Below are positions 59 to 60,454 of a stretch of 64,000 nt of DNA, in pieces. The notes below the pieces were generated by a model. The model saw only the letters and a program-made list of their open reading frames with translations, was not told the DNA's origin and ran no database searches. The stretch's first letter is position 1, and each line of letters opens with the position of its first letter. The stretch is from IMG/VR virus record IMGVR_UViG_3300032268_000832, positions 186,001-250,000 of that record; one strand, given 5' to 3'. Both the position numbers and the translations under genes were made by a program.

Positions 59-574
59 ATGAATTACTATATGATTTATAGTGAAAAAAAAGGGATTGGG
101 ATTGATGAATTATTGTCTTTTGTTGATAAAACAATTAAATTAAATCTTGAAAGAGAAAAAAAACATGAATTATTAAGAGTTAAAGTTGAAGAACTTAAAA
201 AATTATTTAAAGAAAATTCATTAACAAAACTTTCTAGATTAAAATTTAGTTTTTCAGAAGAAGACATAGTGCCGTCTTTAGGTGAGTTTGATTTAAACAT
301 AGACGAAGATGTTGAACCACAAGACATCCAACCAAGTGAAAATTATCAAGAACCTATTATCTATACTTCTGAAATGATAGACAATATGGGTGTTGAAGAA
401 ATGTCTGAAACAATGACAACTCCACAATACTTAGATGAAAACGGAAAACCAATTCAATTTACAGAAGAAGAATTGGAAATGATGGAAGAAGAAGCGAGAG
501 CTGAAAGAAATCGAAAAATGTTTAAAAACAAAAAAAACGGGATGGCTAGCAAAATAGAGTTACCACCTAGATAA
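59..574 (+). CDS. hypothetical acidic protein, probably starts upstream of the window
   Basis: ORF track; followed by hairpin and T-run. Confidence 0.6.
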   Translation: MNYYMIYSEKKGIGIDELLSFVDKTIKLNLEREKKHELLRVKVEELKKLFKENSLTKLSRLKFSFSEEDIVPSLGEFDLNIDEDVEPQDIQPSENYQEPIIYTSEMIDNMGVEEMSETMTTPQYLDENGKPIQFTEEELEMMEEEARAERNRKMFKNKKNGMASKIELPPR

Positions 575-8291: not shown

Positions 8292-8642
8292 GGGGTTGGT
8301 TGGTTTTGATTGGGTATAGTCGTAAACTGTAAGCATGTAGTGCTAGATTGGAAGCACTTTAATCTGTCTATTAAACATTGAATTGACAACGATTTTATCG
8401 TATCTGAAAATTTCCTTGATGAAGCTGTAATGGTTTCTAACGGAGAGTTAGCAGTAGCTTAAAACTGCAAATAGTGGTAATCCACTTGATAGTGATAATT
8501 CACTAAATAATGGTACACCATTCATCTTTATTATTGGATGCCATCGATAATATATTCTGGCGCTAGAAGAAAAATTGTAGCTAAACATGTAGAAAACATT
8601 TGAAGAATACTCAAGACGCGGGTTCGATTCCCGTCAGCTCCT
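8292..8642 (+). ncRNA. ssrA: tmRNA; tag ORF 8385-8462 DNDFIVSENFLDEAVMVSNGELAVA*
   Basis: GGGGTTG/CAGCTCC acceptor with G3-U70, GACGCGGGTTCGATTCCCGT T arm, tag ending AVA-stop. Confidence 0.9.
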
Positions 8643-8787
8643 CGAGTACTTTTTTGGGTGTATTAGGTTAATTCTTATTATACTCAACTCTTTAAAAAGA
8701 TTCAGTTAATTTTACCGAAAACATACTGAAATAAAAACCCCTAGTAAATTGTCGCTTACTAGGGGTTTAACTTTTTAATGCAATACC

Positions 8788-10384: not shown

Positions 10385-10472
10385 CGCGGAATGGTGGAAA
10401 TGGTAACATGCTAGGCTCATAACCTAGAGGAGCAGTAACACTGTGTTGTAGGTTCGAATCCTACTTCCGCAA
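10385..10472 (+). tRNA. tRNA-Met(CAT) with C1:A72 mismatch and long variable arm
   Basis: CTAGG-CTCATAA-CCTAG; variable hairpin GCAG-TAACA-CTGT. Confidence 0.8.
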
Positions 10473-10473
10473 C

Positions 10474-13105: not shown

Positions 13106-13178
13106 GGTTCTATAGTATTAACGTGAATACGCCCGCCTCTAAAACGGAGAAATATCGGTTCGAGTCCGATTAGAACTA
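13106..13178 (+). tRNA. amber suppressor tRNA (anticodon CTA)
   Basis: acceptor GGTTCTA/TAGAACT, loop CTCTAAA, T arm ATCGG-TTCGAGT-CCGAT; anticodon stem only 3 bp. Confidence 0.7.
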
Positions 13179-13238
13179 CAAACACTTTACATTTTTTAGA
13201 AAAATGATATATTTATAAACAAAAAACAAATAGAACAA

Positions 13239-17674: not shown

Positions 17675-18847
17675 ATGAAAACACAGATAAAACAAATACT
17701 TAGAGAAGGACTTACAATGGAAGAAAGAATTAAATTTGACTTCCAAATACCATCAGATATAATTGAAATCCAAAAGGTGTTCACCAAAAACGGATATAAA
17801 TTATATGTGGTTGGTGGAGCTGTGCGCGATGCCCTATTAGGAAAAACACCTAAGGATTTTGATTTAGCTACAGATGCTGTTCCTGACAAAGTAGAAGAAA
17901 TGATGCAAGATGCTGGGTTCAGAACCCTACCAACTGGTAAAGCTTTTGGTGTTATCAACGTATTCACTGACCAAGGAGAATATGAAGTAGCTACGTTTCG
18001 AAATGATATTGGTTCTGGTAGAAGACCAGACAGTGTTGAATTTACAAATATAGATGGTGATGTAAAAAGACGTGACCTTACAATCAACGCTTTGTTCTAT
18101 GATATAGACACAAAAGAAATAGTTGACCTTGTAGGTGGTGTAGACGACCTTAAAAACGGTGTTGTGAGAACTGTTGGTGCCCCAGAAGATAGATTTGGTG
18201 AAGATAGGCTTAGAATTCTAAGAGCGATTAGATTTGCTGGTAGATTTGGTTCTGATTTAGACCCAGCAACAGATATGGCATTACAAAAAGATGCAAGTCT
18301 TGAAGGTATTTCTGGTGAGCGTATTAGAGATGAGTTTATCAAAGGATTAATCTCAGCTAAGTCATTTAAAAAATACATGGAAATGTTAGATAAATATGAC
18401 TTATTCAAATGGGTGTTACCTAACATGTTATTGAATAAAAAATCATACATGAGAAACTCTGGTAAAGTTGACAATTACATTGTTGAATTGGCTAGTTTAT
18501 TAAAAGATAACGAAATTGATTTGTTAAGAAGAAAATTAAATGAATTGAAATACTCAGCAGACGAAATAAAAGCGATTGTGTTTTTAATTTCATTCTTAAA
18601 ATTGAGTGTTGATACCGCATACTTGTTGAAAAAAATGCAACAAACTGCTGGTGTTTCTGATAAACAAATTAGAGAATTTGGTGAGAAAGAAAACATACCA
18701 GAAAAATTGTTAAACGCTTTTGAACAATATAGACTTAGCGTTAGCGGACCAGAGGCTATGGAAAAATTTGATTTGAAACCAAGTCCTGAGTTGGGAAAAG
18801 CCATCCAAAAAATGGAAACAGCTAACTTTGAAAAATTATTAAAATAA
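17675..18847 (+). CDS. cca: CCA-adding tRNA nucleotidyltransferase
   Basis: VGGAVRD, DFDLAT, RRDLTINA, EDRLRILRAIRF, ERIRDE. Confidence 0.92.
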   Translation: MKTQIKQILREGLTMEERIKFDFQIPSDIIEIQKVFTKNGYKLYVVGGAVRDALLGKTPKDFDLATDAVPDKVEEMMQDAGFRTLPTGKAFGVINVFTDQGEYEVATFRNDIGSGRRPDSVEFTNIDGDVKRRDLTINALFYDIDTKEIVDLVGGVDDLKNGVVRTVGAPEDRFGEDRLRILRAIRFAGRFGSDLDPATDMALQKDASLEGISGERIRDEFIKGLISAKSFKKYMEMLDKYDLFKWVLPNMLLNKKSYMRNSGKVDNYIVELASLLKDNEIDLLRRKLNELKYSADEIKAIVFLISFLKLSVDTAYLLKKMQQTAGVSDKQIREFGEKENIPEKLLNAFEQYRLSVSGPEAMEKFDLKPSPELGKAIQKMETANFEKLLK

Positions 18848-24105: not shown

Positions 24106-24189
24106 TGTGATGTGGATGAATGGTTTAGTCACCAGCCTGATACGCTGGGTGTTTATAACACAATGTGGGTTCGAGTCCCACCGTCACAA
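24106..24189 (+). tRNA. tRNA-Ile(GAT) with long variable arm
   Basis: CCAGC-CTGATAC-GCTGG; variable hairpin GTGTT-TAT-AACAC. Confidence 0.8.
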
Positions 24190-24191
24190 CT

Positions 24192-24604: not shown

Positions 24605-24690
24605 TCTGGTTTGGCCGAGTGGACGATGGCAGCAGACTGTTAATCTGCTAGGGTACACCCTCAACGTAGGTTCGAATCCTACAGCCAGAG
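24605..24690 (+). tRNA. tRNA-Asn(GTT) with long variable arm
   Basis: GCAGA-CTGTTAA-TCTGC; variable hairpin AGGGT-AC-ACCCT. Confidence 0.8.
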
Positions 24691-24757
24691 CGAAAATTTT
24701 TTTGTTAATCTATTGACTTTTTGTTCGAATTTATTATATTTATAATAAAAACAAATT

Positions 24758-27761: not shown

Positions 27762-28700
27762 ATGAAAAAAGAAATAAGAACAATATTAAGAGAAGGTATG
27801 TTAAAGAATTCATTAGGGGTTGCGGTTTCAAGACCAGACCAAGTGCTTATCGTGATGCGTGGTATACCAGGCTCGGGTAAATCAACAAAAGCCAAAGAAC
27901 TAGTAGGTGAAGGAGTAATCCATTCAACTGATGCTGTTATAGAGTCACAAGGTGATTACAACAAATTCTTTCAATTAATGTTTGAATCTAAAGACTTTAC
28001 ACCATTGTCAAGAGCTCACTCTACCAATTTAAAAAACGTTGTTGGTTCGTTAAAAGAAGGTGTTTCACCAGTTATCCTAGATAACACAAACATCAAACAA
28101 AACGAATCAAAGGCCGCTATTAAGGCTGCTTTGGAAATGGGGTTGGCTGACAACAACATAAAGTTTGTGGATATAGGTACAGCTGGTCTTACAGCTGAGC
28201 AATTAGCTGAAAGAAACACTCATGGTGTACCGCTTGAAAAAATACAATCAATGATTGAATCACACAAGGGTCAAGGTCCATTAACGCTTAAAAGCGTTTT
28301 AGAATCGAAAGACATGTACAAAGAATCAAACATTTTGTATTCTGCTGTTGTATTGGATGGTGGGTCTAGAGCAGCTTTGTTGTCAAGAATTGAGGGTATG
28401 ATACCTGATGGTTGGAAAGTAATTGCGCACCACATGACTATAGTGTTTGGTAAACCAGTACCAAACCAAGAAGATTTAGGTAAAGAAGTTACTTTGTATG
28501 TTGAAGCTATAGGGATTAGCGATATGGCTATGGCTGTTAGGGTTGAAGGTTATCCATCAACCAATGCGATTCCACATATAACAATTGCGATAAACCCAGA
28601 TGGTGGAAAACCAGTGATGTCGAATGATATCACCAAATGGCAAAAAATAAAGAACTTTGCCATTAAGGGTAGAGTTACTGAAATTAAGAAAGGGTCGTAA
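27762..28700 (+). CDS. polynucleotide kinase-like P-loop fused to 2H phosphoesterase (RNA end healing)
   Basis: GIPGSGKST, ILDNTN, RNTHGVP; HMT and HIT 2H motifs. Confidence 0.85.
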   Translation: MKKEIRTILREGMLKNSLGVAVSRPDQVLIVMRGIPGSGKSTKAKELVGEGVIHSTDAVIESQGDYNKFFQLMFESKDFTPLSRAHSTNLKNVVGSLKEGVSPVILDNTNIKQNESKAAIKAALEMGLADNNIKFVDIGTAGLTAEQLAERNTHGVPLEKIQSMIESHKGQGPLTLKSVLESKDMYKESNILYSAVVLDGGSRAALLSRIEGMIPDGWKVIAHHMTIVFGKPVPNQEDLGKEVTLYVEAIGISDMAMAVRVEGYPSTNAIPHITIAINPDGGKPVMSNDITKWQKIKNFAIKGRVTEIKKGS

Positions 28701-29887: not shown

Positions 29888-31012
29888 ATGTTAAAAATAC
29901 AAAAATTTATAAAAGAAAACGGTTTTGAAAAAGCTGTTAAAGAGTTTCAATTAAAAACTCGTGAATACGAACACAAAGTGTTATTGAAATATGACCAATT
30001 AGTGTCACCAACTATTATGTCGAACATAGAAGTTCAAGAATGTAGAGGTCTTATCCTTGAAAAAGGTACATGGGATGTTATGTCGTTGGCTTTCACAAAA
30101 TTCTTCAATGCTGAAGAAGGAAACGCTGCTAAAATAGATTGGAACACAGCTCACGTTTTAGAGAAACTTGACGGTACTCTTATACAAGTGTATTGGGACT
30201 GGGTAAACGAAGAATGGTATGCTGGTACTACTGGTACAGCTGAGGGTGAGGGTGAAGTTAACAACAAAATGGGAACTACTTTTAACTCATTGTTTTGGGA
30301 CACTGTAACAAAACAATATGCGTTGAATACATGTATGTTCGACAAAAACCATGTATATGTGTTTGAGTTAACAACTCCATATAATATTGTTGTAAAACCA
30401 CACGGAGAATCATCAGCAACTTTGTTGACTGTTAGAAACCGTGTTACATTACAAGAGGTTTCTTGGAAAAACTTAACTATGATTGCAGAATCGTTAAGAG
30501 TACCATTGGTTAAAAGATTTGACTTGAATGCTAAAGATGTGGGTACTTTGTTACGTACATTTGAAGGTATGCCATGGTCAGAAGAAGGTTACGTTGTTGT
30601 AGACGCTAATTTTAACCGTATCAAGATAAAAAACCCAGCTTACGTTGCGGTTCACCACTTGAAAGGTAAAACAGCTGAACACAACATCATAACTATCGTT
30701 AAATCTAACGAGATAGAAGAATTCGCTTCAACTTTCCCAGAAAGAAAAGATGAATTGCTTAGACTTAAAGATAACTACGATAAATTAACTGACAAGTTAA
30801 ATGATGTTTGGGTTGAGTTAAGTGCTCGTAAACCAAAAAACATAACCAAAGAAGAAAAGAAAAGATACGCTGCGGCTGTATTTGAAGTTTGTGGTAAACA
30901 CGACTTAAAACAATTCACTGGATTGTATTTCGGATTGGTTGATGGTAAAGTTGGTTCCGTAGAAGACTTCATTGTAAACTACGATGACAAATTATTATAC
31001 AAAATGCTCTAA
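29888..31012 (+). CDS. RNA ligase, T4 Rnl1-like
   Basis: ECRGLIL, KFFN, EKLDGTLI, FEL, EGYVV, KIK. Confidence 0.85.
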   Translation: MLKIQKFIKENGFEKAVKEFQLKTREYEHKVLLKYDQLVSPTIMSNIEVQECRGLILEKGTWDVMSLAFTKFFNAEEGNAAKIDWNTAHVLEKLDGTLIQVYWDWVNEEWYAGTTGTAEGEGEVNNKMGTTFNSLFWDTVTKQYALNTCMFDKNHVYVFELTTPYNIVVKPHGESSATLLTVRNRVTLQEVSWKNLTMIAESLRVPLVKRFDLNAKDVGTLLRTFEGMPWSEEGYVVVDANFNRIKIKNPAYVAVHHLKGKTAEHNIITIVKSNEIEEFASTFPERKDELLRLKDNYDKLTDKLNDVWVELSARKPKNITKEEKKRYAAAVFEVCGKHDLKQFTGLYFGLVDGKVGSVEDFIVNYDDKLLYKML

Positions 31013-35134: not shown

Positions 35135-36187
35135 ATGAAAAAAATGATTAAATTTCCGTCTATCGAACAATTCAGAAGCGTTGTAGCTACTGTTCTTAGA
35201 AAATATAATTTTGTTGGTCTTGATGAGAATGGTGATGCGATTTACGACACCACAAAACCAAAACCAACGCTTACCTTCAAGGGCACTGTGAAACTTCACG
35301 GAACCAATGCTGGTGTTTCTTTCAAATACGGTTATGATAACACTAGTGAGTATTGGGTACAATCTCGTGAAAACATTATCACACCAGAAAAAGACAATGC
35401 TGGTTTTGCTTTCTTTGTTGAATCACATAAAGAAGCGTTTAAAAAATTTGCTAGTCAAATTGATTCGTTGGGGATGTTTGATGTCCGTCATAACATCGTT
35501 ACGATTTATGGTGAATGGGCTGGTGGTAACATTCAGAAGGGTGTTGGTATTTCAAATCTACCAAAATCATTCTTTATCTTTGGTGTTAAAGTAACTCCGA
35601 TTACTGAAACTGAAGAAGAAGCTAGACAAAAACCAGCTTATTGGATTCCTTCACACTTTTTGAAAAGTCCTGAGGATAACATTTACAATATCGAAGATTT
35701 CCAAACTTGGGAAATCGATATTGACTTTAACATGCCACAATTGGTTCAAAACAAATTGTCAGAACTTACACTAGCTGTTGAAGAAGAATGTCCAGTTGCT
35801 AAGGCTTTTGGGTTCTCTGGAATCGGTGAAGGTATTGTTTGGTCAACAACGCTTAACGGAAACGTACACCGCTTCAAGGTGAAGGGCGAACGCCACTCTA
35901 GTTCAAAGGTTAAAACACTTGCAGCTGTAGACACTGAAAAATTGGAATCAATCCAAAGCTTTGTTGAATACGCAGTAACTGAAAGTCGTTTCAATCAAGC
36001 ACTTGAAAATGTATTCCCTAACGAAGAACCAATTGAAAACAAAAAATTGGGTGATGTAATTCGTTGGGTTGTAAACGACGTAATCAAAGAGGAAATGGAC
36101 ACCATGACTGATAACAAAATCGAACCAAAAGATGTGAACAAATACATCTCTTCTAAGGTTAGAGATATGTTCTTTAAGTTGGTGTAA
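35135..36187 (+). CDS. RNA ligase, Rnl2-like
   Basis: VKLHGTN, IYGEW, GEGIVW, FKVK. Confidence 0.8.
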   Translation: MKKMIKFPSIEQFRSVVATVLRKYNFVGLDENGDAIYDTTKPKPTLTFKGTVKLHGTNAGVSFKYGYDNTSEYWVQSRENIITPEKDNAGFAFFVESHKEAFKKFASQIDSLGMFDVRHNIVTIYGEWAGGNIQKGVGISNLPKSFFIFGVKVTPITETEEEARQKPAYWIPSHFLKSPEDNIYNIEDFQTWEIDIDFNMPQLVQNKLSELTLAVEEECPVAKAFGFSGIGEGIVWSTTLNGNVHRFKVKGERHSSSKVKTLAAVDTEKLESIQSFVEYAVTESRFNQALENVFPNEEPIENKKLGDVIRWVVNDVIKEEMDTMTDNKIEPKDVNKYISSKVRDMFFKLV

Positions 36188-52138: not shown

Positions 52139-52219
52139 GCCGTGGTTCCTGAGTGGTCAAAGGGGGCGGACTGCAAATCCGCTGCGAAAGCTTCGTGGGT
52201 TCGAATCCCTCTCACGGCT
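52139..52219 (+). tRNA. tRNA-Cys(GCA) with extended variable arm
   Basis: GCGGA-CTGCAAA-TCCGC; variable TGCGAAAGCTTC; U73. Confidence 0.85.
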
Positions 52220-52240
52220 CAATGATAAACTGAAAAAAAA

Positions 52241-52634: not shown

Positions 52635-52723
52635 GGGACTATGGTGTAGTTGGTTAAACATCCCATCCTTACAAGATGGAGACGAGAAGTATAACGCTGG
52701 TTCGAATCCAGCTAGTCCTACCA
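52635..52723 (+). tRNA. tRNA-Val(TAC) with 16-nt variable region
   Basis: CCATC-CTTACAA-GATGG; encoded CCA. Confidence 0.8.
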
Positions 52724-53865: not shown

Positions 53866-53940
53866 GGCCCCGTCTTCTAAACGGAATAGGAAGCCACCCT
53901 TTCAAGGTGTGTAATGCGAGTTCGAGTCTCGTCAGGGCTA
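53866..53940 (+). tRNA. tRNA-Glu(TTC)
   Basis: CACC-CTTTCAA-GGTG. Confidence 0.85.
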
Positions 53941-53977
53941 CAATCTGGTTAAGATTCCAGTAATCAAAAATCTAAAT

Positions 53978-56752: not shown

Positions 56753-57091
56753 ATGAGTAAATTTGAAAAAATGATTTCGGCTAGTAATTCAACAACATTA
56801 GCAAACAGAGCTAGCGATTTAGCTGAAGAAGTGTCTTTAGAGTTAAACTCTTTCATCAACAATTTGAAAAGAGAAAAATCTCAGTTGAAAAGTAAAATCA
56901 ACAAGTTAACGGATTTAGCACCAGAGAACACTACATCTTTGAGACCTGGTCATCCAGAATTCAATGCTTCGAATTGGGTAGCTGAGTTACATCAATGTCG
57001 TATGGATTTAGCATTGAAAGATGTTGAATTAGCAGAAGCACAAGCTATCCACGATGAATACTTTGGTGAAGAAGCTGAAAACGCTAAGTAA
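56753..57091 (+). CDS. hypothetical coiled-coil protein
   Basis: ORF track. Confidence 0.65.
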   Translation: MSKFEKMISASNSTTLANRASDLAEEVSLELNSFINNLKREKSQLKSKINKLTDLAPENTTSLRPGHPEFNASNWVAELHQCRMDLALKDVELAEAQAIHDEYFGEEAENAK

Positions 57092-57093
57092 TC

Positions 57094-57579
57094 ATGAGTA
57101 CAAAACCGAAAGTGTATTTGGCGAAATCAAACAGAGCTAATCCAGAATTGGTTAGTAGAGTTCGCCAAACTCTTTCCAAATATGATATAGAAATCGTTGA
57201 ATTTAAGGGTGGTCAATTTAGTCACAAACCAATGTTAGAATGTGAACAATTAGTAGTTGTACCAGACTTATCAGATGAAGAAAATATCGTAATTGGGAAA
57301 GGGTTGTATGAGCAAATTGAAAGATTTGGTTCCTCAAAAGGTTTTGAATATGTTTTAACTATCACTAGTGATAACATGTTGATTAAAGAACTTGATGATA
57401 TTGATATAATTGATTATGATGATTACGTTGAATACGCTCTTCTACATTTTCAATCATCATGGGGTTCTGAACACTTGAAGGACGTTTTAGATGAAATTGG
57501 TTATAACCCAAAATCATCAAATACTTTAAAAACGTCTGGTAAATCAAATTATTATATGTTAATTGGTAAAAAAGTTTAA
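57094..57579 (+). CDS. hypothetical protein, possible TIR or deoxyribosyltransferase-like fold
   Basis: KPKVYLAKS..VRQTLSKYDIEIV N-terminus; weak. Confidence 0.45.
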   Translation: MSTKPKVYLAKSNRANPELVSRVRQTLSKYDIEIVEFKGGQFSHKPMLECEQLVVVPDLSDEENIVIGKGLYEQIERFGSSKGFEYVLTITSDNMLIKELDDIDIIDYDDYVEYALLHFQSSWGSEHLKDVLDEIGYNPKSSNTLKTSGKSNYYMLIGKKV

Positions 57580-57768
57580 AAAAAACTTGCAAGATTGAAA
57601 AACACTTAGTATATTTGCATTGTAATTTTAAATAAACATCGTAGAGTGTTTGAGAGTAGTAGCTATTAGGAAAGTTCCTCCTCTTTATCGAAAGATAAAT
57701 GAAACTTTGTACTGGCGGTGGTATCAAACACAAAGACGTAAGTATTGGGGTCTTACAACCCCAAGAAT

Positions 57769-57841
57769 GGTACCGTAGCTCAGTTGGTAGAGCAATGGAC
57801 TGAAAATCCATGTGTCACTGGTTCGATTCCAGTCGGTACCA
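57769..57841 (+). tRNA. tRNA-Phe(GAA)
   Basis: ATGGA-CTGAAAA-TCCAT. Confidence 0.92.
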
Positions 57842-58014
57842 CTACAGTAAGACGGTTAGCCTTACGTAAAGAACTTTAAGACACCATGGAAGGTTTTAAA
57901 GGGAAATGACGCTAACAGCTGAGGAAGTGCTAGAACTTCTGGGTTTGCAGTTCGGACCCTCTCCCAAAGAAAACACTGCAATGGTACTATCATGGGAACG
58001 ATAGTACCAAAACA

Positions 58015-58090
58015 CGGGGATAGCATAAGGGCGGCAGTTCCTTGCAGAACGTATACTAGTTGCCGAGGGGTTCGACTCCCTTCTCCCCGA
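58015..58090 (+). ncRNA. degenerate tRNA-like RNA
   Basis: CGGGGA/TCCCCG acceptor and GAGGG-GTTCGACT-CCCTT T arm; non-canonical middle. Confidence 0.5.
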
Positions 58091-58104
58091 CTAAATTATT
58101 AACT

Positions 58105-58278
58105 ATGGCTACATTAGCACAAAAATCTAGACAAGCTAGAGCGTTAGCAATGCTTGAAACACAACTTAAAAGTGGTGTTAAAACTCAGAAAGGAACTTCT
58201 GACGTTAAAATCGAATTGACAGATGCGGATAGAAAACGTATCAACAAAGAGATTAGTAACTTAAAAGCGAAAGCTTAA
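58105..58278 (+). CDS. small basic protein
   Basis: ATG at 58105, MATLAQKSRQAR... Confidence 0.6.
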   Translation: MATLAQKSRQARALAMLETQLKSGVKTQKGTSDVKIELTDADRKRINKEISNLKAKA

Positions 58279-58282
58279 AAAA

Positions 58283-58428
58283 TAGGTAAAGAAAGATTAT
58301 TTCAGCAATTTAAATCAACAGCCTCCTAAGCTCGTGGTCGCAGGTTCGAATCCTGTCTAGTTTTTCCTAGGAAAAGCAAGTAGCTCAGTTGGATAGAGCA
58401 CGTATGAAAAAATTAATCTTGTTACCTA
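58283..58428 (+). ncRNA. Y-RNA-like element copy 6 containing a circularly permuted tRNA-Arg(CCT)
   Basis: TAGGTAA-AGA-AAGATTA / TAATCTT-G-TTACCTA, TTCAGCAA; internal order is anticodon arm, T arm, closed acceptor, D arm. Confidence 0.75.
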
Positions 58429-58431
58429 CAT

Positions 58432-58507
58432 ATGAGGATAGCTCAGTTGGTAGAGCGCTCGGTGGTTCGCTGCCGAGAGGTTGCAGGTTCGAGTCCTGCT
58501 CCTTGTA
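58432..58507 (+). ncRNA. tRNA-like RNA with the anticodon loop replaced by a UUCG tetraloop
   Basis: canonical D and T arms; CTCGGTGG-TTCG-CTGCCGAG. Confidence 0.7.
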
Positions 58508-58599
58508 CAAAAAAATTTTTAACTATTATTTAACAAAAAAATTTTGTAGTTACAAAAATACTTAGTATATTTGCATTGTAAAACATAAACAATAACAAA

Positions 58600-59319
58600 A
58601 TGAGTTTTTTTAAAAATCTAATCTTCGCTCAAGATGAAAATCCTAGTGAGGGTACTAGTACACCAGCACCAGTGAAACAACAAACAACAAGTAAGTTTCC
58701 TGATTCTGGTCAAGCAACAACTGTTGCAACACCTGTTTTTTCGTTTCCAAATTCTGAAACGACACCAACACCTACAACCTTTGTTTCTCAAGCAAATGTT
58801 TCTCACGAACACTTAGAGAAAGCTATTGAGTTATATGAAAAGGGTTTTGATTCTTTAAACCAAAATGGTTTTGATTTCTACGAGTTTTTCCAATCAGTAT
58901 CACAAGGTGGTATCGCAAACCCTCAAGTATATACTATGGCTTATGCTATGGGAACAGCAATGGATAAAACTATTAACAAAGAGAAACTTACCTCACAAGC
59001 TGATTACTATATCGCTGAAATTACCAAAGTATACGATGAAAACGTTGCTAAAGGTCAAGGTAAAAAAGAAAGTTTATTGAGACAAAAAGAGTCTGAAAAT
59101 CAAACATTAGCAAATGAGTTAACTATGTTCCAACAACAATTGGAAGCGTTGCAAATTCAAATTGTTGATAGACAAAATAAACTTCAAGCTATCAATGGTA
59201 AATACCAACCACAATTGGATGAAGTTGATAGTAAATTAAATGCCAACACAATTGCCAAGAGTAAAATTGTTGAGGCTATTGAAATTGTAAAATCAGGGAT
59301 TAACACAAACATTAAATAA
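58600..59319 (+). CDS. coiled-coil protein, first gene of the ABC/OmpA operon
   Basis: ORF track; TAnnTTTG promoter upstream. Confidence 0.7.
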   Translation: MSFFKNLIFAQDENPSEGTSTPAPVKQQTTSKFPDSGQATTVATPVFSFPNSETTPTPTTFVSQANVSHEHLEKAIELYEKGFDSLNQNGFDFYEFFQSVSQGGIANPQVYTMAYAMGTAMDKTINKEKLTSQADYYIAEITKVYDENVAKGQGKKESLLRQKESENQTLANELTMFQQQLEALQIQIVDRQNKLQAINGKYQPQLDEVDSKLNANTIAKSKIVEAIEIVKSGINTNIK

Positions 59320-59320
59320 G

Positions 59321-60454
59321 ATGAGTTCACAAACACAATTTAAACAACCAACTACATTAAACGCAAATTTAATGGAGTTACCAATCCTTAAGCACTTTGA
59401 CCAAAATCAAATTGCAACTAAGGTAGACACATTCCGTAAAGGTGAGAAAAATCTTTTCTGGTTCATGAAATTAGCCGCATTTGGTGCTATTGGTTACGGA
59501 TTATGGAAGTATGTATTACCAACCGTATTCCAAGCCATAGGTCATATGTTAGCAGTTGCCGCTACTGGGGTGATGATTGTAGGTCTTATAATCGCAGCAC
59601 CAGTAATTCTTAAAGGGCTTAGAGCCTTGACTAGAAGTCTTCATAAGATGATTATCCGTCACGACCCTTTTGCTCAGTTGGAAATTGAGCGTCATAAGAT
59701 GATTTCTAACCAAACAACATTTAGAGTTGCTAAAGGAAACATTGCTCAGTTAAAAAATGATATGGAATTAGAATCAAGCAGAGCGCAAACAGAAGCTGAG
59801 GAAGGGCAAAAGTCAATTCTTAGACTTCAAGCCAAAGCACAAAAAATCAAAACCAGAATGGACGAAATGGTTCAAAAAGGTGGTGTAGAAGCTAGAGGTG
59901 AAGATGAATATGTAAACTTGGCGTCTGAATTTCAAAAAGTAAACGCTGAAGCATTGCGTGTTTCAAATAAATTAACGCAAGCTAAAGACTTCGTTCAAAA
60001 ATACGGTACACGTGCCAACATCATGAAGAAAATGGGTCAAAAGCTTACAATGGTTGAGACTGCTATGGAGATTAAAATCTCTGACTTTGATGCTACTGTA
60101 GAAATGCTTAAGAAAGACTATGAATTTGGTCAAAAATCTAACGCTGCTACAACTGCCGCTAAAAATGCAATGGGCTTCACCAAAGGATGGGAATTCGATT
60201 ATGCTCTTGACGTTGTAACATCAACGATTGCCGCTGATATCGCGATTACAGCTGGTAACTTGAAAGACATCGAAACGCTTACAACTAACTATACGTTAGA
60301 TTCTGATGAGTTGTTCGCTAACTTGAATGCTGTGGCTGACAAAATCAAAGTTGGTGAAGATATTATTCCAAGTTCAAAACAATACAACAACCCTGAGTAC
60401 GTTTTGTCATCAACTGACAGACAAAAATCAGGTGGGTTTGGTGAGTTGTTCTAA
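59321..60454 (+). CDS. two-TM long coiled-coil protein (PspA-like architecture)
   Basis: two TM helices then extended coiled coil. Confidence 0.65.
   Translation: MSSQTQFKQPTTLNANLMELPILKHFDQNQIATKVDTFRKGEKNLFWFMKLAAFGAIGYGLWKYVLPTVFQAIGHMLAVAATGVMIVGLIIAAPVILKGLRALTRSLHKMIIRHDPFAQLEIERHKMISNQTTFRVAKGNIAQLKNDMELESSRAQTEAEEGQKSILRLQAKAQKIKTRMDEMVQKGGVEARGEDEYVNLASEFQKVNAEALRVSNKLTQAKDFVQKYGTRANIMKKMGQKLTMVETAMEIKISDFDATVEMLKKDYEFGQKSNAATTAAKNAMGFTKGWEFDYALDVVTSTIAADIAITAGNLKDIETLTTNYTLDSDELFANLNAVADKIKVGEDIIPSSKQYNNPEYVLSSTDRQKSGGFGELF

What the first reader, a model, noticed from the sequence alone, without database searches (positions are those of the whole stretch)
58283..58428. Circularly permuted tRNA-Arg(CCT) inside the conserved stem
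The order is anticodon loop CTCCTAA (58323), T arm GCAGG-TTCGAAT-CCTGT, an acceptor stem closed by TTTTCC-TA-GGAAAA, then D arm TAGCTCAGTTGGATAGAGCA. This resembles YrlA topology but keeps an anticodon loop. It may be a tRNA decoy, or a permuted tRNA matured by the phage RNA ligases.
Basis: partly seen in the sequence, partly recalled or inferred. Interest (0 to 1): 0.75.

Follow-up and report, generated by a model that had tools for sequence, protein, structure and literature searches.

The report
Phage tRNA mimic with swappable anticodon arm
A freshwater jumbo phage makes a stable 171-base RNA folded like a tRNA wired in a different order (a Y-RNA-like "YrlA" mimic, not a working tRNA gene), whose anticodon-like hairpin is swapped between close relatives and which in one RNA sample appears joined head to tail.

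Summary
At 58283-58428 (+) a 19-bp interrupted outer stem encloses, in order, a hairpin with a 7-nt anticodon-type loop, a 5-nt variable loop, a T arm, a closed acceptor hairpin and a D arm. This is the known YrlA (bacterial Y RNA-like) topology. Rfam YrlA matches end to end at 36 bits, within the 28-41 bits I measured for genuine YrlAs next to rsr in mycobacteriophage Bxz1 and two Bacteroidota MAGs. Bxz1's YrlA has the same hairpin, so keeping an anticodon loop is not unique. Six distinct homologues give 97% pairing and 7 compensatory pairs. New features: no Ro/TROVE gene in the 306-kb phage record (86% complete) and no conserved Ro-binding motif; the hairpin is replaced as a block between otherwise near-identical relatives (CCU, CUU, CAG) while keeping a 3-bp stem and an N-U-NNN-A-A loop; the RNA is fully covered in RNA libraries from at least three independent freshwater samples (a fourth is labelled ambiguously); one contig is a closed 171-nt cycle joining 58431 (the RNase P site of the next gene) to 58261. 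A decoding tRNA is unlikely: the body does not co-vary with the anticodon and the acceptor stays closed. Best guess: a ligase-sealed tRNA decoy or scaffold. Function is inferred.

The parts
58261..58431 (+). Whole RNA as delimited by the head-to-tail joint (171 nt)
   Evidence: X19 contig of 201 nt = 58379-58431 followed by 58261-408, i.e. 171 + 30 (k-1), a closed cycle. Share of sampled words 0.94-1.00 in RNA runs X19, X15/X16, X22 (labelled 'RNA?') and X18.
58265..58276 (+). 5' tail mini-hairpin AAGC-GAAA-GCUU; overlaps the last codons of the upstream ORF
   Evidence: Folds; L008/L021/L028 have AAGCC-AAAGUUA-GGCUU at the same place.
58283..58304 (+). Outer stem P1, 5' strand (P1a 58283-89, P1b 58293-99, P1c 58300-04)
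   Evidence: MFE fold. 19 pairs, nearly invariant in 6 homologues, one U-A to U.G change.
58305..58319 (+). 15-nt single-stranded linker GCAAUUUAAAUCAAC
   Evidence: Unpaired in the proposed model; conserved in most homologues, replaced together with the hairpin in L028.
58320..58332 (+). Anticodon-position hairpin: 3-bp stem AGC/GCU, 7-nt loop CUCCUAA (58323-29)
   Evidence: All 3 pairs change on both sides among homologues. Cassettes CCU/CUU/CAG all keep N-U-NNN-A-A.
58333..58334 (+). CG (tRNA positions 42-43) pairing with C58401 G58402 (27-28); completes a split 5-bp anticodon stem
   Evidence: Invariant in 6 homologues. The equivalent AG/CU is in Bxz1 YrlA. The Rfam YrlA model pairs these positions.
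58335..58339 (+). Variable loop UGGUC (44-48; C48 opposite G15)
   Evidence: GGUC invariant in all homologues, in Bxz1 and in the Lac Pavin MAG YrlA.
58340..58356 (+). T arm GCAGG-UUCGAAU-CCUGU
   Evidence: Rfam alignment. One pair changes on both sides and one changes on one side only.
58357..58380 (+). Closed acceptor hairpin (7 acceptor positions with an A.A mismatch, 3 extra pairs, CUAG loop)
   Evidence: 3 compensatory pairs; CUAGU../..GCAAG versus CCACCC/GGGUGG in relatives.
58381..58402 (+). U8 A9, D arm GCUC-AGUUGGAUA-GAGC, A26, C27 G28
   Evidence: D stem invariant.
58405..58428 (+). Outer stem P1, 3' strand (P1c 58405-09, bulge 58410-13, P1b 58414-20, P1a 58422-28)
58432..58508 (+). 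Adjacent anticodon-less tRNA-like gene; its 5' end (RNase P site) sets the 3' end of the mimic
   Evidence: ARAGORN and Rfam both start it at 58432. 8-bp stem capped by a UUCG tetraloop.
58105..58278 (+). Conserved 57-aa ORF, present on the same RNA contigs; overlaps the RNA's 5' end by 18 nt
   Evidence: 13 of 20 window-versus-L006 differences fall on third codon positions. RNA contigs run 58115/58117 to 58313/58358.
30038..30643 (+). Context: T4 Rnl1-type RNA ligase domain (candidate sealing enzyme)
   Evidence: PF09511, 59 bits. An Rnl2-type ligase lies at about 35285-35884, an AAA_33 kinase ORF at about 27846-28262, and a CCA-adding enzyme at about 17801-18169.

Best explanation
This is a YrlA-class (Y RNA-like) tRNA mimic, not a tRNA gene. 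Shown: a phage-encoded, expressed small RNA folds as a circularly permuted tRNA. The acceptor stem is closed by a loop, the T and D arms and the variable loop are canonical, and the RNA's two ends leave through the anticodon stem (between tRNA positions 28 and 29) as a 19-bp conserved stem, P1. A 3-bp hairpin with an anticodon-type 7-nt loop stacks under the remaining 2 bp of that stem. Inferred: it is made on a transcript that also carries the upstream 57-aa ORF and the downstream tRNA-like gene. RNase P cutting at 58431/58432 leaves a 3'-OH. An endonuclease makes the 5' end at 58261. P1 holds the two tails together like a broken stem-loop, and a phage ATP-dependent ligase (Rnl1- or Rnl2-type) seals them into an exonuclease-proof 171-nt circle. 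Because it has no free CCA end it cannot be charged. It most likely acts as a decoy or scaffold for proteins that recognise the tRNA shape and read the anticodon loop. Given the phage's candidate Pnk-type kinase, Rnl1-type ligase and CCA-adding enzyme, host anticodon nucleases are the leading candidates. The invariant P1 probably binds a second, sequence-specific partner. Block swapping of the hairpin (CCU, CUU, CAG) would retune which factor is engaged.
For: Topology and family: Rfam YrlA covers 58312-58428 end to end at 36 bits, E 4e-6. The next hits in this 38-tRNA genome score 18.7 bits or less. Genuine YrlAs beside rsr score 32.5 (Bxz1), 41.3 and 28.1 bits (Bacteroidota MAGs). Bxz1 YrlA has the same hairpin plus 2-bp layout. 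Structure: 6 distinct homologues give 97.4% of cells paired against 46.5% or less when partners are slid, and 7 pairs with changes on both sides. Hairpin as cassette: window versus L006 has 8 differences, all at 58319-58332 within 58240-58508. L008 versus L028 has 13 of 16 differences in a 28-nt block within 900 nt. Every cassette keeps a 3-bp stem and an N-U-NNN-A-A loop. Expression: RNA contigs with 0-2 differences in X15, X17 and X19. The 171-nt stretch has share 0.94-1.00 in X19, X15/X16, X18 and X22 (X22 labelled 'RNA?'), while X15-X19 held only 0.17-0.26 of the 1-kb context. Circle: X19 contig = 171 + 30 nt closed cycle, with its 3' side exactly at the start of the next tRNA-like gene. 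The junction is absent from viral DNA contigs, and all DNA homologues lack a tandem copy. Repair context: Rnl1-type, Rnl2-type, AAA_33 kinase and CCA-adding genes.
Against: No partner protein has been identified. P1, the D stem and the 2-bp CG helix are invariant, so covariation neither supports nor contradicts them. The fold's free-energy z-score is only -1.8. The circular form rests on one low-depth contig (depth 3.9) in one run. Logan contigs cannot show read-level ends, and DNA from that sample was not examined. X17 also holds an uncut precursor running to 58451. The hairpin swaps could reflect relaxed constraint plus recombination rather than selection; Chen et al. call the equivalent 'V' stem-loop less conserved. 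The decoy function and the identity of the sealing ligase are inference only. The family is narrow: 6 distinct sequences, all close relatives.
Confidence: 0.55

Rival explanations
1. Ordinary Y RNA: the RNA binds the host's Ro60 orthologue (Rsr) through its stem and tethers it to an effector, as YrlA does in Salmonella and Mycobacterium. The phage supplies only the RNA half.
For: Same topology and Rfam family as YrlAs beside rsr. The likely host phylum is Bacteroidota, and 2 of 5 candidate host-clade genomes encode a 515-aa TROVE protein with a YrlA next to it, followed by a tRNA as here. The window's 5' tail has AGCGAAAG, 7 of 8 positions against GNCGAAN0-1G. Some jumbo phages carry TROVE with a tRNA-like partner (PMC7824862).
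Against: No TROVE gene in the 306-kb record or in 4 related records, and none among the neighbours. P1 has no GNCGAA-type motif and does not resemble the Bacteroidota YrlA stem GUGCCGUAUGUGAGAGG. The 5'-tail match drops to 6 of 8 in L008/L019/L021/L028, lies in coding sequence and is at chance level. 3 of the 5 candidate host-clade genomes showed no TROVE.
Confidence: 0.2
2. True permuted tRNA gene: the transcript is circularised, the acceptor loop is opened by RNase P and RNase Z, CCA is added by the phage enzyme, and the product decodes AGG (AAG or CUG in relatives).
For: The de-permuted sequence is a complete cloverleaf with U8, A14, G15:C48, G18G19, T54-Psi55-C56-type loop, U33 and A37. 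A head-to-tail RNA joint exists. The phage has ligases and a CCA-adding enzyme. The phage lacks Arg(CCU), Lys(CUU) and Leu(CAG) tRNAs. M. smegmatis YrlA is cut by RNase P and CCA-tailed in vivo (PMC4201824).
Against: The observed joint keeps P1, leaving about 88 nt inserted between positions 28 and 29, and the acceptor hairpin is still closed in that contig. There is no bulge-helix-bulge motif. The same class-I body carries Lys (L008) or Leu (L028) anticodons, and a CAG anticodon on a body without a long variable arm does not fit bacterial Leu tRNA architecture (general knowledge). Acceptor pair 5-68 is A.A and the helix runs on past position 1, a poor RNase P substrate. The ARAGORN call does not depend on the hairpin.
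Confidence: 0.05
3. Functionless relic or mere processing leader: a decayed tandem-tRNA pair (the proposed evolutionary origin of YrlAs) that survives only as the 5' leader of the downstream tRNA-like gene.
For: The partial tRNA-model hit 58294-58356 (model positions 9-63, 20.8 bits) looks like the remains of a first tRNA. The dimeric-tRNA origin model is discussed in 10.1101/312249. It is physically contiguous with the next gene, and a precursor contig exists.
Against: 146 nt are identical between window and L006 apart from the hairpin, while the adjacent ORF differs at 20 positions. Compensatory changes maintain three helices. It accumulates as a discrete species in several metatranscriptomes where the flanks are absent.
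Confidence: 0.08
4. Assembly artefact or chimera at this locus.
For: None found.
Against: Independent assemblies from different samples carry it in the same context, and RNA contigs span it.
Confidence: 0.01

Closest known systems
YrlA (Y RNA-like A; Rfam RF02553) of Salmonella, Mycobacterium smegmatis and cluster-C mycobacteriophages such as Bxz1 (Chen et al. 2014, PMC4201824; Wang et al. 2018, 10.1101/312249)
   Same: Order: stem, (V hairpin), variable loop, T arm, closed acceptor stem-loop, D arm, stem. Conserved tRNA tertiary positions. Located among or next to tRNA genes. The phage also carries many tRNAs and a tmRNA, as Bxz1 does. The Bxz1 RNA has the same 3-bp hairpin with an N-U-NNN-A-A loop plus a 2-bp helix.
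   Different: No rsr/TROVE gene nearby or anywhere in the record. No conserved GNCGAAN0-1G motif. S. Typhimurium YrlA and the Lac Pavin Bacteroidota YrlA lack the hairpin. Here the hairpin is exchanged as a block between near-identical relatives. There is evidence for a covalently closed form.
Circularly permuted tRNA genes of the red alga Cyanidioschyzon merolae and some other algae and archaea (Soma et al. 2007; from my own knowledge, not read here)
   Same: The 3' part of the tRNA is encoded upstream of the 5' part; acceptor strands are joined by a linker; a circular RNA intermediate occurs.
   Different: Those use a bulge-helix-bulge motif and the splicing endonuclease to join the ends precisely, and give a normal decoding tRNA. 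Here there is no such motif, the joint retains a 19-bp stem, the anticodon is not conserved, and none is known in bacteria or phages.
Deinococcus radiodurans Yrn1
   Same: A Y RNA that Chen et al. model with a potential 'anticodon arm' (5-bp stem) as well as a T arm.
   Different: There the loop has 6 nt, the arrangement of arms relative to the ends differs, and it binds Rsr and PNPase. No such partners are identified here.
T4-type tRNA repair (Pnk + Rnl1) against anticodon nucleases such as PrrC/RloC, and phage tRNAs that evade or replace cleaved host tRNAs (background in PMC7824862, PMC2610378)
   Same: The phage encodes Rnl1-type, Rnl2-type, kinase-domain and CCA-adding proteins beside large tRNA arrays. 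In known systems the anticodon loop is the part under attack, and it is the variable part here.
   Different: Known countermeasures are repair enzymes or functional replacement tRNAs. A non-chargeable, possibly circular mimic acting as a decoy has not been described in the papers I could search.

Membership tests
YrlA / bacterial Y RNA-like (RF02553) | tRNA-like T stem-loop with conserved T-loop sequence | tested here: met
   GCAGG-UUCGAAU-CCUGU aligned to the model; the stem covaries.
YrlA / bacterial Y RNA-like (RF02553) | tRNA-like D stem-loop downstream of the T arm | tested here: met
   GCUC-AGUUGGAUA-GAGC; invariant in 6 homologues.
YrlA / bacterial Y RNA-like (RF02553) | Closed stem-loop (AS) between the T and D arms, variable in sequence and length | tested here: met
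   10-bp hairpin 58357-58380; 3 compensatory pairs; loop 4 to 18 nt among homologues.
YrlA / bacterial Y RNA-like (RF02553) | 5' and 3' ends pair into a long stem that carries the Ro60-binding module | tested here: inconclusive
   A 19-bp interrupted stem is predicted and is strictly conserved. There is no covariation, and whether it binds Ro60 is unknown.
YrlA / bacterial Y RNA-like (RF02553) | GNCGAAN0-1G motif near the 5' end | tested here: not met
   Absent from P1. AGCGAAAG at 58266-73 matches 7 of 8 positions in window and L006 but only 6 of 8 in the other homologues, lies in coding sequence and is at chance level.
YrlA / bacterial Y RNA-like (RF02553) | Encoded within about 4 kb of an rsr (TROVE) gene on the same strand | tested here: not met
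   No TROVE in the 306-kb record (86% complete) or in 4 related records. Neighbours have no TROVE-like signal.
YrlA / bacterial Y RNA-like (RF02553) | Score at or above Rfam's gathering threshold (69 bits) | tested here: not met
   36 bits. YrlAs lying beside rsr in Bxz1 and two Bacteroidota MAGs score 32.5, 41.3 and 28.1, so the threshold is not discriminating outside the seed lineages.
YrlA / bacterial Y RNA-like (RF02553) | Physically bound by Ro60/Rsr | not testable with these tools
   Needs immunoprecipitation or in-vitro binding.
Circularly permuted tRNA gene (Cyanidioschyzon type) | 3' half upstream of 5' half; rejoined sequence gives a full cloverleaf | tested here: met
   The acceptor, D and T arms are solid. 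The anticodon stem forms as 3 + 2 bp. The ARAGORN call itself is lenient.
Circularly permuted tRNA gene (Cyanidioschyzon type) | Bulge-helix-bulge motif at the junction for precise excision and ligation | tested here: not met
   The junction is flanked by 15-nt and 2-nt single strands and a 19-bp stem. The folds show no 3-nt bulges 4 bp apart.
Circularly permuted tRNA gene (Cyanidioschyzon type) | Circular intermediate that joins the tRNA halves | tested here: inconclusive
   One RNA contig shows a circle, but it joins the outer ends 58431 to 58261 and keeps P1.
Circularly permuted tRNA gene (Cyanidioschyzon type) | Conserved anticodon and amino-acid identity; mature CCA-ended, chargeable product | tested here: not met
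   CCU, CUU and CAG occur on near-identical bodies. The acceptor is closed in all RNA contigs that span it. Charging itself is not testable here.
Canonical tRNA (RF00005) | Linear cloverleaf detected by tRNA models | tested here: not met
   No ARAGORN call on the linear element. Rfam tRNA gives only a partial 20.8-bit hit, below its gathering score of 29.

The most novel reading that the evidence does not exclude
A phage makes a covalently circular, non-chargeable tRNA mimic. Its anticodon arm is an exchangeable cassette, used as a nuclease-proof decoy (or re-sealable bait, together with the candidate Pnk-type kinase and the Rnl1-type ligase) for host anticodon-directed defence nucleases, independently of Ro60. 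Cassette swapping between Arg-, Lys- and Leu-type loops would track the specificity of the host's nucleases.
Probability: 0.2. Interest if true: 0.85.

Novelty: new variant of a known kind. Interest (0 to 1): 0.6.

Why it matters
YrlA-type tRNA mimics have been defined by their link to Ro60, and the partner of their tRNA-like domain is still unknown. This one stands alone in a Ro-less jumbo phage. It sits beside a tRNA-repair toolkit, is abundant enough to assemble from several metatranscriptomes, and its only fast-changing part is the anticodon-position hairpin. That points to the anticodon loop as the functional surface, which gives a concrete handle on what these mimics bind. The hairpin is also present in the Bxz1 YrlA, which suggests that the 'V' stem-loop of at least some YrlAs is a retained anticodon arm. 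That fits the dimeric-tRNA origin model. If the circular form is real, it would be an example of a phage ligase sealing a regulatory RNA rather than repairing a tRNA.

Tried and rejected
(1) blastn of the 1-kb region against 50,697 phage records found only hits to the ordinary tRNA-Phe and nothing on the element.
(2) The seed TTCAGCAATTTAAATC..GGTTCGA in viral contigs gave three extra contigs (L010, L012, L014) with nothing tRNA-like after the seed; rejected as chance.
(3) Five of the ten metagenome hits to the P1 3'-strand pattern were chance matches.
(4) The flanking 239-aa and 57-aa ORFs used as handles recovered only the same four viral contigs. L009 (36% identity) has no RNA element.
(5) Gene conversion from the phage's own tRNAs: no cassette is closer than 5 of 17 mismatches to any phage anticodon arm.
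(6) A hidden Ro among the neighbours: Pfam, PHROGs and the Atlas feature search gave nothing for the 780-aa, 377-aa and other ORFs.
(7) The promoter and terminator scan gave nothing beyond chance. The one 'terminator' is the T arm followed by the U-rich acceptor strand.
(8) The very deep 'joints' with letters between the two sides (57793/4 to 58336, 58399 to 58478, 58458 to 58328) are tRNAs of other organisms cross-mapping on the D and T arms, not products of this locus.
(9) The ARAGORN de-permutation test turned out to be weak evidence for the anticodon arm.
(10) The paralog of the downstream tRNA-like gene (genome 286683-286759) has no permuted partner upstream.
(11) I did not run complex prediction with a host Rsr. 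With one job and no calibrating positive control, the result could not have been interpreted.

Full report
WHERE THE WINDOW LIES. The window is positions 186001-250000 of a 306,463-bp IMG/VR virus record. It is linear, CheckV estimates it 86% complete, and it has 30.9% G+C. ARAGORN finds 38 tRNA genes in the genome (28 of them in the window), and Rfam finds a tmRNA. Sequencing runs that hold the region are lake, river and other freshwater metagenomes. A neighbouring ABC permease is 50-63% identical to Bacteroidota proteins, so the host is probably a freshwater member of that phylum.

THE OBSERVATION.
- loop CTCCTAA at 58323-58329;
- T arm at 58340-58356;
- a closed hairpin at 58357-58380, containing TTTTCC-TA-GGAAAA;
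- D arm at 58381-58400.
The limits of the finding, 58283 and 58428, are the two ends of a long interrupted stem that I call P1. It has three segments: TAGGTAA/TTACCTA, AAGATTA/TAATCTT and TTTCA/TGAAA. A T loop followed within 14-36 nt by a D arm occurs once in the window and never in 100 shuffles. The P1 strands are single copy in the genome, and the other close T-to-D spacings are ordinary tandem tRNAs. Neither ARAGORN nor Rfam's gathering thresholds call anything on the linear sequence.

A SPLIT ANTICODON STEM. C58401-G58402, just after the D arm, pair with C58333-G58334, just after the hairpin. The 3-bp hairpin stem (58320-22 with 58330-32) can stack on this 2-bp helix to give a 5-bp anticodon stem whose 5' strand is interrupted by P1. 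Opening the acceptor hairpin and joining G58402 to A58320 gives a sequence that ARAGORN calls tRNA-Arg(cct). My controls show ARAGORN is lenient. It still calls a tRNA for 50 of 81 wrong junction offsets and 101 of 200 shuffled hairpins. That call therefore vouches for the acceptor/D/T core only.

WHAT IT IS. At a permissive threshold, Rfam's YrlA (Y RNA-like) model matches 58312-58428 over its full length at 36 bits, E 4e-6. That is below the gathering score of 69. The next-best hits in this tRNA-rich genome score 18.7 bits or less and lie on real tRNAs. To calibrate, I scored YrlAs that satisfy Chen et al.'s criterion (PMC4201824) of lying beside an rsr/TROVE gene on the same strand:
- mycobacteriophage Bxz1, 189 nt upstream of gp220: 32.5 bits;
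- a Lac Pavin Bacteroidetes MAG: 41.3 bits;
- a Sediminibacterium MAG: 28.1 bits.
The score here is typical of genuine YrlAs outside the seed lineages.
The Bxz1 RNA has the same fine structure: a hairpin CUC-AUUGCAA-GAG, then AG and AGGUC before the T arm, and CU after the D arm. De-permuted, it becomes 'tRNA-Ala(tgc)'. Chen et al. already describe a less-conserved 'V' stem-loop upstream of the T arm in many YrlAs. Wang et al. (10.1101/312249) state that the Salmonella YrlA lacks an anticodon loop, and they relay the proposal that YrlAs arose from dimeric tRNA transcripts. The partial tRNA-model hit at 58294-58356 (model positions 9-63) fits that origin. So the permuted topology is a known kind, and keeping the hairpin does not by itself separate this RNA from YrlA.

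CONSERVATION AND COVARIATION. Flanking-protein and pattern searches recovered the element in four other viral contigs and four metagenome contigs, giving six distinct sequences. On the alignment, 97.4% of cells in my proposed structure form standard pairs, against 34-47% when the partners are slid. Seven pairs change on both sides: all three hairpin pairs, one T-stem pair and three acceptor pairs. P1, the D stem and the CG helix never vary, so covariation says nothing about them. Their strict conservation, while the upstream ORF differs at 20 positions between window and L006, argues for constraint.

THE HAIRPIN IS A CASSETTE. Between window and L006 the only differences in 58240-58508 are eight changes at 58319-58332. 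They turn AGC-CUCCUAA-GCU into GCU-CUCUUAA-AGC. Between L008 and L028, 13 of the 16 differences in 900 nt lie in a 28-nt block of linker plus hairpin, turning AGC-CUCUUAA-GCA into UGC-AUCAGAA-GCA. The 'anticodon' is therefore CCU, CUU or CAG on otherwise near-identical bodies. Every version keeps a 3-bp stem and a 7-nt loop with U at position 2 and AA at positions 6-7, as does Bxz1's. None resembles an anticodon arm of the phage's own tRNAs.

EXPRESSION AND ENDS. Four metatranscriptomes from different samples were laid on 57000-59400:
- X15 holds contigs 58117-58358 (2 differences) and 58329-58429 (0 differences).
- X17 holds 58115-58313 and 58300-58451.
- X18 holds a diverged relative, 58125-58423.
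- X19 holds a 201-nt contig that reads 58379-58431 and then 58261-58408.
The X19 contig is 171 nt plus a 30-nt overlap, which is the signature of a closed cycle in a k=31 assembly graph. The 3' side of the joint is exactly the base before the downstream tRNA-like gene, which both ARAGORN and Rfam start at 58432. That is where RNase P would cut.
The flanking ORFs are mostly uncovered in these runs. When only the 171 nt are queried, the share of sampled words is 1.00 in X19, X15, X16 and X22 (X22's library is labelled 'RNA?') and 0.94 in X18. X15-X19 held only 0.17-0.26 of the surrounding 1 kb. The junction 28-mer is absent from viral DNA contigs. In every DNA homologue the element is followed by the tRNA-like gene, not by a second copy. 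I conclude that the RNA is expressed and accumulates as a discrete species. A circular or head-to-tail ligated form probably exists, but it rests on one low-depth contig, and DNA from that sample could not be examined.

WHAT IT IS NOT.
- Not a member of the Ro-linked YrlA set as defined. There is no TROVE gene in this record or in four related ones, no hint of one among the neighbours, and no RtcB.
- No conserved Ro-binding motif. P1 has no GNCGAAN0-1G motif and does not resemble the stem of the Bacteroidota YrlA. A 7-of-8 match in the 5' tail is not conserved and is at chance level.
- Probably not a decoding tRNA. The joint keeps P1 and the closed acceptor. There is no bulge-helix-bulge motif. 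The same class-I body carries Lys- or Leu-type loops.

HOW IT MOST LIKELY WORKS. Shown: a conserved, expressed, permuted tRNA fold with an exchangeable hairpin at the anticodon position. Inferred: RNase P releases the 3' end, an endonuclease makes the 5' end at 58261, and P1 juxtaposes the tails. One of the phage's ATP-dependent ligases then seals them; the candidates are an Rnl1-type gene at about 30038-30643 and an Rnl2-type gene at about 35285-35884. The phage also has a 316-aa kinase-domain ORF about 1.8 kb upstream of the Rnl1-type gene and a CCA-adding enzyme. That is the toolkit that jumbo phages use against tRNA-cleaving defences (PMC7824862). Only the anticodon-position hairpin changes quickly, while the rest of the tRNA shape is frozen. 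I therefore favour a non-chargeable decoy or scaffold for a factor that reads the anticodon loop, with P1 as a handle for a second partner. A role as a Y RNA for host Rsr is the main rival. Rsr and YrlA do occur in 2 of 5 candidate host-clade genomes, in the same YrlA-then-tRNA order.

VERDICT. This is a new variant of a known kind: a YrlA-class tRNA mimic that is Ro-less, has a cassette-like hairpin and may be circular. The function is unproven.

Noticed in passing
window 58432-58508; paralog at genome 286683-286759 (outside the window); L008, L019, L021: The gene right after the mimic is a cloverleaf whose 'anticodon' arm is an 8-bp stem capped by a UUCG tetraloop, so it has no anticodon. 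Its acceptor has G3:U70 (the alanine identity pair), also kept in L008. A paralog has a GAGG-capped 8-bp arm and no G3:U70. L008 and L021 carry an 18-nt insert with a GNRA-capped mini-helix. This is a second family of tRNA mimics in the same phage.
   Followed up: partly
window 58015-58089: A third tRNA-like fold, missed by ARAGORN: a 6-bp acceptor-type stem CGGGGA/UCCCCG, a T arm GAGGGG-UUCGACU-CCCUUC, and one long hairpin in place of the D and anticodon arms. There is only a weak hit to the 3' end of the tmRNA model.
   Followed up: partly
window 13106-13179 and 53866-53941; 8292-8645: The phage carries suppressor-type tRNAs with anticodons CTA (reads TAG) and TCA (reads TGA), plus its own tmRNA (72 bits). 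This may mean stop-codon recoding, or manipulation of termination, during infection.
   Followed up: no
window 10385-10473, 24106-24190, 24605-24691, 52139-52220, 52635-52723: Several tRNAs that normally have short variable loops are 82-89 nt long (Met, Ile, Asn, Cys, Val; Pro is 96 nt outside the window). This suggests insertions, long variable arms or small introns.
   Followed up: no
window ~17801-18169, ~27846-28262, ~30038-30643, ~35285-35884: A CCA-adding enzyme, an AAA_33 kinase-domain ORF (316-aa frame, about the size of T4 Pnk), an Rnl1-type ligase and an Rnl2-type ligase lie between the tRNA arrays. Together they would make a T4-style tRNA repair kit.
   Followed up: partly
window 58105-58278: A conserved, basic 57-aa ORF with no family match lies on the same RNA contigs as the mimic and overlaps its 5' end by 18 nt. 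13 of 20 differences from L006 are at third codon positions. It could be a partner protein.
   Followed up: partly
window 58566-58573: TATATTTG, matching the Bacteroidota -7 promoter consensus TAnnTTTG (from my own knowledge), lies 27 nt before the ORF at 58600. This agrees with a Bacteroidota host.
   Followed up: no
L083:315-426 (-) and 224-296 (-): In a Lac Pavin Bacteroidetes MAG, the YrlA beside rsr is followed 18 nt later by a normal tRNA. This is the same YrlA-then-tRNA order as in the phage.
   Followed up: partly
window 58329-58429 (X15 contig): One X15 RNA contig matches 58329-58429 perfectly and then continues for 30 nt that do not match the window beyond 58429. It may be a second junction variant or a different downstream sequence. 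The letters were not shown.
   Followed up: no
L010, L012, L014: Three unrelated viral contigs share the 18-mer TTCAGCAATTTAAATCAA with the linker, but have nothing tRNA-like after it. Probably chance.
   Followed up: yes
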